Origin: Podarcis bocagei
Taxonomy: Eukaryota
Direction: 5' to 3' (one strand)
Assembly: GCA_964188305.1 (NCBI GenBank)
Contig: OZ076889.1
DNA length: 64,000 bases
The notes under the pieces are model-generated. The model was not told the DNA's origin. It ran no database searches and worked only from the letters and a program-made list of their open reading frames with translations. Below are positions 14,601-20,600 of this stretch, one piece after another (the stretch's first letter is position 1; the number at the start of each line of letters is the position of its first letter). A program made the position numbers and the translations under genes.

Positions 14601-17600
14601 AAGATCTAAAGGATAGACAATAGTTGAGTATACGTATGCCTATGCGAGAGAGATTTTGAAAGAGAGAAGAAGGTTGTGCTAATAATTTTTTAATGAGATT
14701 TTATGAAAATGTATTTAATAAATAAATACATTGGTAACAGTATACTATTTTGAGTGGAAGGAGCAGCTTTTTTATAAAGTGCAGCTAAAGGGTTTACGGT
14801 GAGACAGTTTTCTGGAATTGTGTCTGTTTTAAATGGATTGTGTCTATTTAATATTTTTAAGTGGGGCTATAGCTTAAAAGATAATGTGCTTCGTATTCAT
14901 AAGATCCCAGGATCCCTCTCCAGGTTAAAAAAGGACACAAGGAATTATTCTGGGTGGATTGGACATTACTGATAGATGAACCAGCACTGGAAGGCAAGTT
15001 CATGTGTTGAAGATGATATGGGCAATTTTAATATATGCACCTTTTCAAGGTGATATGGAAAAGCCAGTTGTGCAGTGACATAAATAGCAGCACTGATTAC
15101 TAGGGCTTTTAGTATATGTACCACTTGGGCTAATTTTAGACTTAACCACTCCCATGTGAACACTGCTGTGTCCTTTTCCATGGTGCTTTCTGTGAAGCTG
15201 TAACATTTAAATACTGCTTACATCGTGCATGTCACCCAGTCATTGGAAAGTAGTCTGAAAGGCAAGGTATAACATTTTCAGATTAGATAGAGTCATAGGC
15301 GCCGACTCCATGGGGCTTGAGGGGGCCCGAGCCCCCTCAAAAATTCGTTTGGGGGGGCTCAGCCCCCCCAATAATCTCGGGCGACGGTGGGCGCGTCCGC
15401 GGCTTTTATAGGGCGCCCGGCGCGCACCAGCTCAATAACGGGCACCGGCGCGGCGGGGGGCGCCGGGCCGGGGGAGGGGGGCGGCCGGCCTGTCTCCTTG
15501 GCAACCCCATTGAGCAGCGCCGGCTCCCCCGGGAGGGCCATCCCCCCGCGCCGCCGATCGCCAACACCGCCGACGCTGTGGCTGCCCGAGCCCGAGCCTG
15601 AGCTTGAGCCCGACCCGAGCCCGACCCGGAGCCTGAGCCCGAGCCCAAGCCCGTCAGTCAGTCAGGAAGGAAGGAAGGAGAAATGGGGAGGGAGACGAGG
15701 GAGGAAAATTGCGCGCAGGGTGAAGAAAGGAGAAGGGCGAACGAGACGAGCTTCCAACCCAAAAAAGGGCTGGAAGACTGGGAGGATGCAGGATCAGGAA
15801 AGAAAGCGACGCCTTCCCCGCCCGCGACGTCGCCCGCTTGTCATTGGCAGCGCAGCGGGCGCCCAGAGGGGCTGGGCACCGGCGCAGGGCCGCTCCGCAG
15901 CCGCGGAGGATAGCTGCGCGGCTAGCAAGGTGCGCCGCGTAGAGCACGGCCCTTGTGTGGCCCGGTGGCCAGGCAAGCTTGGGCGGGGACCCCCATGCAA
16001 ATCTAAGACGGGAGAAGAGGGCAGAGCAAAGGGGGTCCCTTCCCCAACCTCCGGCTCTGAGACTTCCCTGAGCCCCAGAAAAGCGAAAGGATTTTCTCTC
16101 TCTTTTTTTATATAAATATTTTATTAAGGTTTCAAATACAAAGTTAGAAACATACACTGAAGAAAAAAGTAAAAGAACAAGAAAAAGAAGAAAAGAAAAC
16201 CAACCATTCAACACATTTTTTATATAACTAACTGGACTTCCTCGCATCTCCCTTACCCTGCATTCTTTATAATAAAGATATCAGCAAATTATTACCTTGT
16301 TTCGTACCTTATTTTGTACTTTTCAAATACTATACCTCTAAATTTAACATACTTTTCATCAGTTACTTATATCTTAAATTAAACATAGTATTACCTTAGA
16401 TTTTGACCTTTTCTTACTTAAAATATAATTTCCTGTTTCCCAAATCTAATTGCTGAAGCTATAGTTTCCGAATCGTGTAAATTTTTAACATTCATACAAC
16501 TTATATTGTTTTTGTAAATAGTCCTTAAATTTTTTCCAGTCCTCTTCCGTTGTTTCTTCTCCCAAATCTCGGATTCTGCCAGTCATTTCAGCCAGTTCCA
16601 TGTAGTCCATCAATTGCGTCTGCCACTCTTCTAGTGTGGGCAAATCTTGTGTCTTCCAATATTTTGCGATAAGTATTCTTGCTGCTGTAGTTGCATACAT
16701 AAAGAAAGTTCTATCCTTCTTTAACACTTTCTGGCCAACAATGCCCAAGAGGAAGGCCTCTGGTTTCTTGGGAAAGGTATACTTAAATACCTTTTTTAAC
16801 TCATTATAGATCATTTCCCAGAAGGCCTTCACTTTTGGACAAGTCCACCAGAGGTGAAAGAATGTCCCTTCAGCCTCCTTACATTTCCAACATTTATTAT
16901 CAGACAGGTGATATATTTTTGCAAGCTTGACTGGGGTCATGTACCACCTATAAATCATTTTCATAATATTTTCCTTCAAGGCATTACATGCCGTGAATTT
17001 CATTCCGGTGGTCCATAACCTTTCCCAGTCCTCAAACATGATGTTATACCCAATATCCTGAGCCCATTTTATCATGGCTGATTTGACTGTCTCATCCTGA
17101 GTGATTTTCTCTTCAACCTGCCCTCCATCCTCTTGCAGAAAACTCTTTGCCTGCCCTGCCCGTATCTCGTTTTTGCTTTTTAATTCCACACACGCACCCT
17201 TCGGACTTCGTGGCAATCGGGCGCGCGGGTGCGTTTCCTAAGAGAGTGAGGACCCCCGCCTCCTCCCCACCTGCTCCCTCGCCAGCCAGCCAGCCGCGCG
17301 CCCTAGCCGGAGAGCCCCGGCCGTCCCCGTCGCGCAATCGGCTGGATCTCCCTTCAGCAGGCCGTGCTCACAACTCGGCCCAGGGGCCCCCCAGCAGCGG
17401 ATCTCCAGCCCAGCTGAAGAATCCGGCAACAAGCCCCCTCCTCCCCAATCGCTCCGCCGAAATACGCTCCAAAACCCCCCAGATAGGCCGCCGGCCGCCA
17501 AGTCTAGTGGCACCCTGAGCGAGGGTCTCTCCCCAACACCGCCACCTCGAACTGCGTTCTCCCGGCTACCCGAGCGAACCAGCGGCAGGACCCCGGTATG

Positions 17601-20600
17601 GGCCCCCCCAATATTTTTTATAAGTCGGCGCCCCTGGATAGAGTGCCCATGCACACTAGCACTGACATCTCCAAGGATATGCCCGCACAGTTGGGTGGTG
17701 CACAAGACATGGAGCATTTAAACACACCACATTGAGATGTCCTTTCGGCAGCTCTTACATGAATGTGATAACCTTAAAAATGTCTCAAACTCAAGCAAGC
17801 ATTAGTCATATTCCATGAGTTCTCAGTCTGAAGAGAGAAACATACTTTAGCTAAAATCTACCTGTGTTTTGGAAAGGGTGGGTCTTCATCATTCATATGA
17901 GAACCAACTAAAACATTTTTTAAAAAACTGGTCAAACAAAGCTTAGTCCCCTAAATCAAATAATCAAGTGTTCAGCATGCATACAGAGGCTAGGTGAGGG
18001 CAGGGCAGTTGAAGACTGCAGACCTAGAGACAGGCCAAGCATCGTAGGCTACCACAGATTGCAGAGTAAGCTTAGTTTGCAGATTGAGTTGCTGCAGAAC
18101 ATGCAAAGCACAGCATCCATACAGGTTGTCAGTTTTTCATTGCTCTTAGGCTCTGAAATAATGGTGTCAGCAGCAGTCAGGGCTTGCGCTAGAAAGACTA
18201 TACAGAATATACTGGTTCTCATTCCATTTCCTTCAAAGCATATCCATCTGCATTGGTATTGTCCAAGAGGTAGGATACTATTGAGGATTGAACATACGCC
18301 AGATTCAGGAGTTCAGGTCAGGGATGTCTTGTTATTACTTGCACACTTTTCAGAAACCAAACATGGGCAAGTGCAATCTGATCCCCTCCCTCCCTCCCTC
18401 CCTTCCTTCCTTCCTTCCTGGTAGCAAAGCATTCTAAGTCTCACTTCAGTGGCAGTTCATGCATATCAAACTTGTGTAATAGTGGTTTCATTTGCATGTC
18501 ATGGTAGACAAAGCTATGACTTACCAGGACTGTGAAAAGATGCTTGTTCGTGGAGAGGAACTCATACCTGCTTTGTTCCTCTCTAGTCTTTTTAAAACAG
18601 TGCAGCAGCTAATCCAAGGAAACCTGGAATCATGGTTAAGGTTTGTTCTCCTTAACTATGATCTGTTTGCTTTCATCACTTGTAATCCTTTGGATCTAAC
18701 TCATTTGATGGAATACACTCAGTTAATTCTGCTGCCACTTTTTGTGGGCATCAAATAGGTCTTGCAGATCTTAGGGACATGTGTAGCTTGTCAGTTAGCT
18801 AACCAAATTCCTATACAGTTCTCACATGCAAGTTTGCCATCTATGCATAGAAACAAATTCTGCACTCCAACTCCTGGATTCTGTCATTCCAAATCTGAAT
18901 AAAGTTCTCTTTTTCTTTTTCTCATCGTGTCCCCTGCTGCAAAAGTGCACATTCATGCAACAAATCACTTATGAAGAGGTAAATAGATATTCAATTTGGT
19001 GTGGACACAACCAGAGGAAAGGCATAGGCCCAGCCAGCCTTGTTCACACCGGATAGCTATGATGGTTTATAATTAACATCATATTTCTGTCTATATAAAA
19101 ATATCAATGTTTTATAAGTTGAAGTTGGATATTTGCTGAAATAGAGACATTCTAAACAGTGCCAATGTAGGTTTCTGCTGTTCCCACACAAGTTGACAAA
19201 CTATTTTTGTTGATTCTATAAGTCGGCTATGGTATCTTGAGGAAGCATTGCATATTTCCAAGTTGGCACTGCTGCAGTTTCAGCATCCACAAGAGAGATG
19301 TACAACTTTGATATGAATGAATAGCAAATTATACATTTATTGTCAAAGAAACATAATTGTGCAGAAATTATTTGTGCTTTAGTACTTCAAGGAAGTACCA
19401 CGATGTTAGTGGGCTCTGACCAGGGTTCTGTGTTAAGTCATATGTTGATGACACAAATTCTGTGTAGCTTATTACCCTCCCCCAACACAGTAACTAGTAT
19501 CAGATTTCAGAACAGGGCAATTAGAGAGCGGTCTATCCCCTGTCATTCACTTCCAGCAGCCTGAGGTTTAGATCAGCTGTTTTGTATAAACCCAAAGGAG
19601 AGTTTAGAAACCTGCCACCCAGGAGCCAGCTCTGTGAATTACTTTATGCTGAGCATTGTGGCACTCTCCCAGCCCTTTATCAAAAGAACTGACTCTTTAA
19701 ATTGGCAGCGTTGGGGAAACAGCCCTGCTGCAGGCCATTGAACTCCATGGGAGGACTTGCCGGCTGGGAGACTTCAAAAGCCAGATCTATAGAGCTGCAC
19801 TCTTTTACCCTGTATGAGGAAAGGGAAAGAGACTCTTAGAAGTTCAAGGGTGGCTGCCCTGTATTTGTGGTTGGGCCCCAAAAGGAAATGCCAGGAACTG
19901 CCCCCAAACAGTTCCATGCCGCTGCTGTTCAGAATGCTCTGGAGGCGGAAAAAAGTCCTGCTCGTTCTCCAGAGATTTGTGGAAAAGTCTGAGCCGCTTA
20001 AAAGAAGGCTGGAGAAGGAGGTTAACAGACTCTCAAGTGGGGGTAAGGGCAAGATGAACAAAACAGAATGGGCAGACATGGATGGCTTTTGCTGCCCTAT
20101 AGCCCAAACCTGCAGCCTACCAGATCTGAACAGAGCCCACCATCTGTGTGTGGAAGCCCACCAGGTCCTTGGCAGAGTTCCTGTTTTAGCAAACAGGCAA
20201 GTGCAAGAGGTTTACAGAGCCCCTGGTAGCCCCACACATAGCTGGTGGGCTCTGTGTTGCTTAGTAGGTCATATATTATGCAGACCTGCTGCAGTCTCTG
20301 GCTGCGAGTGGAATTGGTAATTTCCCAAGCCAGCAGGAAGAGTCCCAGTCAGTGCCAGTTGTGAGAGGAGAGCAGCCTGCTTAGTTGGAGTTATGCAAAG
20401 CTCAAGATTAGCTCTGGATATAATGATACCTTTTCCTTACAGCATGTTCTGTTGGTGGAAATGTATGCAGGTTTTTGAGTTACATAGAACTCCTGCAGGC
20501 CGTGAAATTGGCCCAATCAAACATATAACTGTGTGTGCATGCATGTGTGTGTGCTTTAGGACTAGCATAAACAGCTTTCTGCTATAGAGCTTTCACTGAA

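What the first reader, a model, noticed from the sequence alone, without database searches (positions are those of the whole stretch)
15294..17636. Pack-hAT: a DNA transposon carrying a captured TAL1/SCL exon fragment
Seen: 14-bp TIRs and a perfect 8-bp TSD (GATAGAGT) delimit a 2343-bp element with no transposase. Its interior is far more GC/CpG-rich than the host intron. The minus-strand frame at ~15375-15550 reads [49 protein letters not shown]. Established: 8-bp TSDs mark hAT elements; LLNGVAKET...PVIEL is, from my recall, the N-terminal signature of the haematopoietic bHLH factor TAL1; human TAL1 (1p33) lies near ZSWIM5/UROD/HECTD3 (1p34.1). Gene-fragment capture by TIR elements is well known in plants (Pack-MULEs) and much less described in reptiles. 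Inference: a non-autonomous hAT captured part of the TAL1 CpG island/exon, possibly from a linked locus, and then transposed. The intact TSD and retained CpGs imply a recent event.
Basis: partly seen in the sequence, partly recalled or inferred. Interest (0 to 1): 0.9.

Follow-up and report, generated by a model that had tools for sequence, protein, structure and literature searches.

The report
Lizard jumping gene carrying TAL1 fragment
A cut-and-paste transposon in a wall-lizard genome carries about 1 kb copied from the blood-development gene TAL1, exists in hundreds of copies, and landed at this site so recently that related lizards still have the empty site.

Summary
Positions 15294-17636 form a non-autonomous, hAT-type element. 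It has 14-bp inverted ends (12/14 matching), a perfect 8-bp target duplication (GATAGAGT) and no transposase.

About 1.05 kb of its interior is collinear with the real TAL1 locus of Podarcis lizards at 96-97% identity in the two best-aligned blocks. This covers the end of the intron before the main coding exon and the first third of that exon. The AT-rich middle (16100-17102) is a nested, 5'-truncated L1 with its own 10-bp duplication. About 345 bp (17252-17597) is CpG-rich DNA of unknown origin.

- **Not a one-off capture.** The junction between the element's end and the TAL1 piece sits at about 150-260 times single-copy depth in related species.
- **Young insertion.** Three related taxa have the exact empty site, and a sample of the same species seems to carry both forms.
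- **Older capture.** The copy was taken within the genus Podarcis, from a TAL1 closest to P. muralis. A linked donor is not needed.

This scan's first readers noted about 20 similar "Pack-hAT" elements elsewhere in this genome; those notes are unverified. It is a new member of the known Pack-TIR kind, unusual for its copy number in an amniote.

The parts
15286..15293 (.). Left copy of the 8-bp target-site duplication GATAGAGT
   Evidence: Empty-site contigs keep a single copy.
15294..15383 (+). Left terminal module: 14-bp TIR (15294-15307) plus subterminal G/C-run palindromes (15317-15340, 15349-15371). It is shared with other subfamilies.
   Evidence: Word depth here is about 5,800-8,600 times the flank. 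Other contigs diverge just behind 15383 into a different GC-rich interior (tables 2 and 7).
15380..15598 (-). Copy of the TAL1 main coding exon, codons about 36-109 of Podarcis TAL1. It contains the 60-aa ORF 15362-15541, which runs out into the terminal module.
   Evidence: 97.3% to L002 and 96.8% to L003. 96% aa identity over 74 aa. phmmer E 4.9e-19.
15599..15663 (-). Simple-repeat stretch (expanded GGGCTC hexamers, TGAC x3, TTCC repeats). It stands where roughly 200 bp of TAL1 is missing: the end of the intron, the splice acceptor and the first ~30 codons.
   Evidence: Alignment to L002/L003; the repeat finder family D1.
15664..16099 (-). Copy of the TAL1 intron sequence just upstream of the main coding exon (CpG-island-like).
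   Evidence: 95.9% to L003 18785-18350 and 92.8% to L002.
16100..17102 (-). Nested 5'-truncated L1: the ORF2 C-terminal part, the 3' UTR and a short A-rich tail. It is flanked by a 10-bp duplication GATTTTCTCT (16090-16099 and 17103-17112).
   Evidence: The 243-aa ORF matches human L1 ORF2p residues 1066-1224, E 9.4e-14. The two sides of the L1 are contiguous in the TAL1 locus (L003 18350/18359). Depth is about 20,000-45,000 times the flank.
17103..17251 (-). Copy of TAL1 intron sequence, the 5'-most part of the captured piece, with a 22-bp deletion. The breakpoint is at 17251/17252.
   Evidence: 86.6% including the gap to L003 18359-18189.
17252..17597 (.). CpG-rich interior segment of unknown origin, either a second cargo or an older family backbone.
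   Evidence: No match in 137 kb of fetched loci, including four lacertid TAL1 loci, or in the rest of the window. No coding signal or Pfam hit. Depth is about 1.2-3 times that of the TAL1 part in X4 and X7.
17598..17636 (-). Right terminal module: 14-bp TIR (17623-17636) and a subterminal C-run motif (17599-17611). The inner boundary is approximate.
   Evidence: Depth rises in the bin 17468-17611.
17637..17644 (.). Right copy of the target-site duplication GATAGAGT

Best explanation
This is one copy of a non-autonomous, hAT-type 'Pack' transposon family of wall lizards (Podarcis or a very close relative).

Structure. The element keeps only about 90 bp (left) and about 40 bp (right) of transposon ends. 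The space between holds about 1.05 kb copied from the host TAL1 gene: the last ~720 bp of the intron before the main coding exon and the first ~110 codons of that exon, with two internal deletions. About 345 bp of other CpG-rich DNA sits beside it.

Inferred history.
1. The TAL1 piece was copied into a family member during repair or replication, by template switching. This happened within the genus Podarcis, from a TAL1 allele closest to that of P. muralis.
2. The chimeric element was then moved and multiplied in trans by a transposase that recognises the shared ends. It reached hundreds of copies in several species.
3. An L1 inserted into the cargo by target-primed reverse transcription.
4. 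This copy, probably already carrying the L1, pasted itself into an intron of a ZSWIM gene next to UROD, with the TAL1 piece antisense to that gene, and made the 8-bp duplication.

Shown here: the structure, the TAL1 origin, the multicopy state, the empty sites and the nested L1. Inferred: the capture mechanism, the identity of the transposase, and the order of the L1 and hAT insertions.

The 60-aa ORF is a TAL1 N-terminal scrap without the bHLH domain. It is most likely not a working protein.
For: Structure: TSD and TIR; chance expectation 0.016 per window; no transposase or any Pfam domain in the element's ORFs.

TAL1 origin:
- phmmer against 1.84 billion proteins finds only two hits, both TAL1 N-termini.
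- 96% identity over 74 aa to P. raffonei and P. muralis TAL1.
- Three collinear blastn blocks match the true TAL1 loci next to STIL (L002, L003) at 97/96/86%.
- The true TAL1 loci carry no copy of the element's ends, and the motif is conserved as far as turtle and birds. So the direction is gene to element.

Multicopy:
- In organism B, whose site is empty, a 153-nt contig identical to 15440-15592 has depth 4103 against 15.9 for the flank.
- In organism C, a 223-nt contig spans the terminal/TAL1 junction (15352-15571, 3 differences) at depth 1258 against 8.5.
- Summed depth over the cargo is about 250-1,800 times the flank in four runs.
- The junction stretch is held by DNA runs of six further coded organisms, including runs with only 2-10 Mb of contigs.

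Mobility:
- Contigs of organisms B and D run straight from 15285 to 17637 with 8 shared letters.
- Organism C has the same junction on a shorter contig.
- In X1 (flanks 0-1 differences from the window) the left-flank contig stops exactly at 15293 and overlaps an empty-junction contig by 30 letters, as expected for a heterozygote.
- One X1 contig at single-copy depth joins an L1 sequence to position 15294. That is another insertion with the same terminus (table 5c).

Capture date (764 clean sites):
- 29 derived states are shared with all three Podarcis TAL1 loci against Lacerta.
- 4 are shared with P. muralis only, and 0 with raffonei or lilfordi.
- The ML tree groups (element, P. muralis) with UFBoot 94.
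- 18 changes are unique to the element against all four TAL1 loci. Of the 19 sites where it differs from all three Podarcis loci, 9 are CpG transitions.

L1: ORF2 match. The 10-bp duplication matches a contiguous TAL1 sequence.

Host context: a ZSWIM4-8 C-terminal exon on + at 33138-34175 and a URO-D exon on -.
Against: - No second full copy with its own TSD was read directly. Copy number rests on assembler word depth of short contigs, and the tool warns this is not a copy number.
- hAT assignment lacks a transposase. The left end reads CATAG rather than the usual CAG-type motif. The target GATAGAGT does not fit the common nTnnnnAn hAT preference, though it fits the NNTNNANN pattern reported for some anole hAT families in PMC3014272.
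- The heterozygous state in X1 is inferred from contig ends, not from spanning reads.
- The parent of 17252-17597 is unknown.
- The exact 3' breakpoint is blurred over 15380-15390.
Confidence: 0.88

Rival explanations
1. A single, very recent capture: a plain non-autonomous hAT picked up TAL1 DNA from a linked locus and jumped once to this site.
For: Perfect TSD; CpG o/e of the copy still 0.89 against 0.99 in the parent; empty sites in relatives.
Against: The terminal/TAL1 junction and the TAL1 piece sit at about 150-260 times single-copy depth in species that lack this insertion. They also appear in many other runs. The cargo differs from Podarcis TAL1 at 3-4% of sites, and 18 changes are unique to it. 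At least seven positions are private to this copy against nearly all other copies (table 3).
Confidence: 0.04
2. The same Pack structure, but the ends belong to another cut-and-paste superfamily with 8-bp duplications (P, Merlin, Zisupton or Novosib-like) rather than hAT.
For: No transposase was seen. The target GATAGAGT does not fit nTnnnnAn. The TIR matches none of the anole hAT TIRs listed in PMC3014272.
Against: The right end starts with CAGGG, which fits the YARNG hAT terminal motif quoted in PMC3014272. The short TIR with subterminal repeats is typical of hAT. By general knowledge, hAT is the dominant young DNA-transposon group in lizards.
Confidence: 0.08
3. Assembly artefact: a repeat-rich contig was wrongly joined into the ZSWIM intron.
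For: The interior is high-copy and hard to assemble. No single listed contig spans the element.
Against: The exact TIR-plus-TSD architecture is the signature of true integration. The left-flank contig of X1 ends exactly at the TSD/element boundary, with a k-1 overlap to the empty-allele contig, which implies a second (filled) path in that sample.
Confidence: 0.03
4. The TAL1 similarity is chance or low-complexity GC/proline-rich matching, and the interior is ordinary transposon sequence.
For: The peptide is Pro/Gly-rich. Pfam finds nothing.
Against: About 1.05 kb is collinear with the TAL1 locus, including intron, at up to 97% identity. The piece nests inside Podarcis TAL1 sequences in a tree.
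Confidence: 0.01

Closest known systems
Animal Pack-TIR elements, mostly Pack-hAT (Tan et al. 2021, Nat Commun, PMC8277862)
   Same: Transposon ends on both sides of a fragment copied from a host gene whose parent copy is still present. The fragment is a small partial gene. Template switching is the proposed capture route. hAT is the commonest carrier (208 of 370).
   Different: In that survey of 100 animal genomes most cases were single-copy and lay near the parent. Only four were multicopy (three in frog, one in alligator; the frog example shown has three copies), and the anole row lists 0 Pack-TIRs. Here depth indicates hundreds of copies in several species, an unrelated insertion site and a still-polymorphic insertion.
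Plant Pack-MULE / Pack-TYPE transposons (PMC8903248, PMC6379663)
   Same: Non-autonomous TIR elements whose interior is a mosaic of captured gene pieces and which remain mobile. A bias to GC-rich 5' ends of genes is reported for Pack-MULEs (my knowledge; not checked here).
   Different: They belong to the Mutator or CACTA superfamilies, with 9-bp or 3-bp duplications, and occur in plants. This element has an 8-bp duplication and hAT-like ends, and sits in an amniote.
Young non-autonomous hAT/hobo families of Anolis carolinensis (Novick et al. 2011, PMC3014272)
   Same: A lizard genome with young families that share only their ends and have unrelated interiors built by 'incorporation of extraneous DNA'. 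Copy numbers run from hundreds to thousands, with 8-bp TSDs.
   Different: None of the listed TIRs matches CAGGGGCGCCGACT. The filler described there is other transposon fragments and anonymous genomic DNA, not an identified gene exon with a traceable parent.
Helitron capture of the NUBPL promoter and first exon in Myotis bats
   Same: A promoter-proximal gene fragment was captured once and amplified to very many copies in an amniote genome.
   Different: It is a rolling-circle Helitron with no TIRs and no 8-bp duplication, and its capture mechanism is different.

Membership tests
hAT superfamily (non-autonomous member) | 8-bp target-site duplication | tested here: met
   GATAGAGT on both sides. 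A single copy is present in empty-site contigs of related taxa.
hAT superfamily (non-autonomous member) | Short terminal inverted repeats with a YARNG-type terminal motif | tested here: met
   14-bp TIR, 12/14 matching. The right end CAGGG fits YARNG as quoted in PMC3014272. The left end CATAG deviates at one of the two mismatched positions.
hAT superfamily (non-autonomous member) | Mobilised by a transposase with a hAT dimerisation domain, carried by an autonomous element with the same ends | not testable with these tools
   No genome-wide search of this assembly is available. No transposase occurs in the window's element, and no related ends occur in 137 kb of fetched loci.
hAT superfamily (non-autonomous member) | Target preference nTnnnnAn (Ac group) or nnnTAnnn (Buster group) | tested here: inconclusive
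   A single site, GATAGAGT, fits neither. It does fit the NNTNNANN pattern listed for anole hAT-N7/N8. One site cannot test a statistical preference.
Pack-TIR (Pack-type) transposon | The interior is copied from a host gene whose parental copy exists elsewhere | tested here: met
   About 1.05 kb is collinear with the TAL1 loci of P. muralis, P. raffonei, P. lilfordi and Lacerta agilis. The parent lies next to STIL, whereas the window holds ZSWIM and UROD exons.
Pack-TIR (Pack-type) transposon | Transposon ends on both sides and no transposase inside | tested here: met
   The only protein similarity inside is a nested L1 ORF2 fragment.
Pack-TIR (Pack-type) transposon | Transposed after capture (several copies, own TSDs, empty sites) | tested here: met
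   Exact empty site in three related taxa. The end/cargo junction is at 150-260 times single-copy depth in taxa that lack this insertion. One other junction starts at 15294. The junction stretch has wide run distribution. Individual TSDs of other copies were not seen.
TAL1 gene proper | bHLH domain exon and STIL-TAL1 synteny | tested here: not met
   The element holds only codons about 36-109. No HLH Pfam hit. The neighbours are ZSWIM and UROD, not STIL. So it is a fragment copy, not the gene.
L1 retrotransposon (nested insert 16100-17102) | ORF2 homology, 5' truncation, A-rich 3' end, variable-length TSD | tested here: met
   ORF2p C-terminal match, E 9.4e-14. The 10-bp TSD is contiguous in the TAL1 parent. 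Other L1 copies read on past 17099-17103 (table 7). The A tail is short (7 A).

The most novel reading that the evidence does not exclude
This copy may be one of many subfamilies of a single, still-active hAT family in wall lizards. On this reading the family repeatedly picks up CpG-island promoters and first exons of host genes (TAL1 here; PACS1, SIX5, SPR, SORCS2 and RANBP9 in other unverified first-reader notes) and spreads each in tens to hundreds of copies. That would be an amniote counterpart of rice Pack-MULEs. It could seed portable promoters, antisense starts in host introns and chimeric first exons, or small RNAs against the parent genes.
Probability: 0.4. Interest if true: 0.8.

Novelty: new member of a known kind. 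Interest (0 to 1): 0.6.

Why it matters
Gene-fragment capture by cut-and-paste transposons is well studied in plants. In animals it is thought to be mostly single-copy and independent of transposition (PMC8277862).

This case combines a traceable parent gene, hundreds of copies, presence in several closely related species and an insertion that is still polymorphic. That makes wall lizards a natural system for three questions: how such chimeras arise, why CpG-island 5' ends are taken, and whether the scattered copies act as promoters or as sources of small RNA.

It also matters for annotation. Hundreds of TAL1-exon look-alikes can mislead gene prediction, read mapping and CpG-island calls in these genomes.

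Tried and rejected
- Exact-product look-up of the 60-aa ORF found nothing on record. A word-indexed protein search with it found nothing within the 33-105 aa length range, which says little.
- Look-ups of TAL1 isoforms P0002, P0006 and P0008 failed because only the longest product is indexed. Isoform X1 proteins worked.
- L001, a TAL1 exon of an unknown squamate from a Logan contig, matched only 206 bp at 88%. It was too distant to trace the intron part.
- The TIR and both terminal modules were searched in the rest of the window and in 137 kb of fetched loci. No other copy was found.
- Segment 17252-17597 has no match in the TAL1 loci, no coding signal and no Pfam hit. I ran no further search on it, because a first-exon scrap would fall outside that tool's length window.
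- The TIR table of Novick et al. has no match.
- The 'TATA box' noted on this window (s1-349694) is the native TAL1 coding sequence, with the same letters in P. muralis and P. raffonei TAL1. It is no evidence for a promoter gained by the element.
- Whether the L1 was already in the source copy stays open. Contigs in organisms B and C end exactly at 17103, which hints that L1-bearing and L1-free copies coexist there. The indel rows near 16100 can also be explained by L1-free copies.

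
Full report
**What is in the sequence**

The stretch 15294-17636 is bounded by a perfect 8-bp direct repeat, GATAGAGT (15286-15293 and 17637-17644). Immediately inside it are 14-bp inverted ends that match at 12 of 14 positions: CATAGGCGCCGACT on the left, and CAGGGGCGCCGACT when the right end is read inward.

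The end pattern occurs nowhere else in the 64-kb window, where 0.05 matches are expected from shuffles. A perfect TSD next to such a TIR is expected by chance about 0.016 times per window.

Both ends carry G/C-run palindromes of the kind seen in subterminal transposase-binding regions: 15317-15340, 15349-15371 and 17599-17611.

The GC-rich parts have 65-69% GC and CpG o/e 0.83-0.87. The flanks have 42% and 0.16. None of the element's ORFs has a Pfam domain, so there is no transposase.

**The AT-rich middle is a separate, nested insertion**

The 243-aa minus-strand ORF at 16485-17216 matches the C-terminal part of human LINE-1 ORF2p (residues 1066-1224, E 9.4e-14). The block 16100-17102 is flanked by a 10-bp duplication, GATTTTCTCT (16090-16099 and 17103-17112).

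The sequences on its two sides are contiguous in the TAL1 parent locus (L003 18350/18359). So a 5'-truncated L1 entered after the cargo was captured. Without it the hAT-type element is about 1.33 kb long.

**The cargo is TAL1**

The 60-aa ORF (15362-15541, minus strand) was scored against 1.84 billion proteins and found only two hits. Both are TAL1 N-termini:
- one is named TAL1 of Pelodiscus sinensis (E 2.4e-5);
- the other is an unnamed ORF on a Logan contig that continues into further TAL1 sequence (E 4.9e-19).

A search starting from that ORF returned TAL1 of many squamates. The element's frame is 96% identical over 74 residues to TAL1 residues 36-109 of Podarcis raffonei and P. muralis. 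This also places the window in Podarcis or a very close relative.

I fetched the real TAL1 loci, which lie next to STIL as in mammals. The cargo is collinear with them in three blocks:

| Window block | L003 (P. muralis) | Identity to L003 | Identity to L002 (P. raffonei) |
|---|---|---|---|
| 15380-15598 | 19233-19015 | 96.8% | 97.3% |
| 15664-16099 | 18785-18350 | 95.9% | 92.8% |
| 17103-17251 | 18359-18189 | 86.6%, with a 22-bp gap | 85.4% |

The main coding exon of TAL1 starts at about L003 18910. The captured piece is therefore the last ~720 bp of the preceding intron plus the first ~110 codons.

Roughly 200 bp is missing from the copy: the end of the intron, the splice acceptor and the first ~30 codons. 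Simple repeats stand in its place at 15599-15663.

The segment 17252-17597 matches nothing in the TAL1 loci and shows no coding signal. The true TAL1 loci contain none of the element's ends, and the peptide motif is conserved in turtles and birds. The transfer therefore went from gene to element.

**It is a family, not a single event**

Logan contigs of four DNA runs were laid on 14300-18600. The flanks are single-copy, with depths of 100, 16, 8.5 and 52. The whole element sits hundreds to thousands of times higher.

The clearest rows come from taxa that lack this insertion:
- In organism B, a 153-nt contig identical to 15440-15592, entirely inside the TAL1 exon piece, has depth 4103 against 15.9.
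- In organism C, a 223-nt contig spans the boundary between the terminal module and the TAL1 piece (15352-15571, 3 differences) at depth 1258 against 8.5.

The terminal bin 15308-15451 is higher still, at about 5,800-8,600 times the flank. Many contigs diverge just behind 15383 into a different GC-rich interior. So the 90-bp end is shared with other subfamilies.

The junction stretch 15310-15600 is also held by DNA runs of six more coded organisms. Some of those runs have only 2-10 Mb of contigs, where only high-copy sequence assembles.

Word depth is not an exact copy number, as the tool warns. A ratio of 150-260 for single exact contigs still cannot come from TAL1 plus one copy.

**This insertion is young**

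Contigs of organisms B (4220 nt) and D (2427 nt) run without a break from 15285 to 17637, with the 8 letters of the TSD present once. That is the exact empty site. Organism C shows the same junction on a shorter contig.

In X1 the flanks differ from the window at 0-1 positions. There the left-flank contig ends exactly at 15293 and overlaps an empty-junction contig by 30 letters (k-1). This is the graph shape expected when filled and empty alleles are both present. I infer this from contig ends, not from spanning reads.

One X1 contig at single-copy depth joins an L1 sequence to position 15294 (table 5c). That shows another insertion with the same terminus.

**The capture is older than the insertion**

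I compared the element with TAL1 of P. muralis, P. raffonei, P. lilfordi and Lacerta agilis at 764 cleanly aligned sites:
- The element shares 29 derived states with all three Podarcis loci.
- It shares 4 with P. muralis alone and none with raffonei or lilfordi.
- An ML tree groups it with P. muralis TAL1 (UFBoot 94).
- It has 18 changes unique to it against all four TAL1 loci. Of the 19 sites where it differs from all three Podarcis loci, 9 are CpG transitions.
- It keeps 75 CpGs against the parent's 85.
- At least seven positions are private to this copy against nearly all other copies, mostly CpG decay (table 3).

So the TAL1 piece was taken within the genus, some millions of years ago by rough inference. 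It was not taken at this locus, and a linked donor is not needed.

**Context**

The window holds the last ZSWIM4-8-type exon on the plus strand (33138-34175; Pfam 3.8e-77) and a UROD exon on the minus strand. The element therefore lies upstream of the last ZSWIM exon, most likely in an intron, with the TAL1 piece antisense.

**How it most likely works**

Shown here: a non-autonomous element with hAT-type ends, a host-gene cargo, multicopy status and a recent integration.

Inferred: the cargo entered by template switching during gap repair or replication, as in the models of PMC8277862. A transposase supplied in trans recognises the shared ends. The L1-bearing form transposed as a unit, which is more economical than two recent hits at one polymorphic site.

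The ORF lacks the bHLH domain and is unlikely to act as TAL1.

**Comparison and novelty**

Pack-TIR elements, mostly Pack-hAT, are known in animals. In the survey of 100 genomes only four were multicopy, the frog example shown has three copies, and the anole row shows none. Anole non-autonomous hATs do take up extraneous DNA, but their TIRs differ and no gene exon was traced.

This is therefore a new member of a known kind, notable for copy number, ongoing activity and a datable parent.

First readers of this scan noted about 20 other 'Pack-hAT' elements with other first exons in the same genome. I could not test those notes. If they hold, the family-wide phenomenon would be more interesting than this single copy.

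Noticed in passing
window 33138-34175 (+) and 41171-41746 (-): A ZSWIM4-8 C-terminal exon (Pfam PF21055, E 3.8e-77) and a uroporphyrinogen decarboxylase exon (PF01208, E 1.6e-6). They fix the host gene context as ZSWIM5-like next to UROD.
   Followed up: partly
window 17799: Organisms B, C and D carry a 9-bp insertion (CATTGATAA) behind 17799 relative to the window and X1. It is a small indel that separates the window's species from its relatives.
   Followed up: no
window 17836-17929: The right flank holds a short stretch 71-79% similar to the 3' UTR of the nested L1 (16146-16229). It is probably an old L1 tail fragment.
   Followed up: no
window 49600-52400: A cluster of long overlapping ORFs on both strands (up to 243 aa) with no Pfam hits. 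It may be a GC-rich island near the UROD or neighbouring gene promoter. A 3-mismatch TIR look-alike at 51947-51960 does not start with CAG and is probably chance.
   Followed up: partly
P0024 (Sphaerodactylus townsendi 'NKG2-A/NKG2-B-like isoform X3', 396 aa): A gecko C-type-lectin gene model aligns to the TAL1 N-terminal query over 80% of its length at 45% identity. It is either a chimeric gene model or another relocated TAL1 exon fragment.
   Followed up: no
L002 about 18350 (P. raffonei TAL1 intron): P. raffonei has a 6-bp deletion exactly at the sequence that served as the L1 target in the element's cargo. The site is indel-prone.
   Followed up: no
window 18378-18427: A TTCC/GGAA-type microsatellite breaks contigs in all four runs. 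It resembles the repeat in the TAL1 intron and gives spurious blastn hits there.
   Followed up: no
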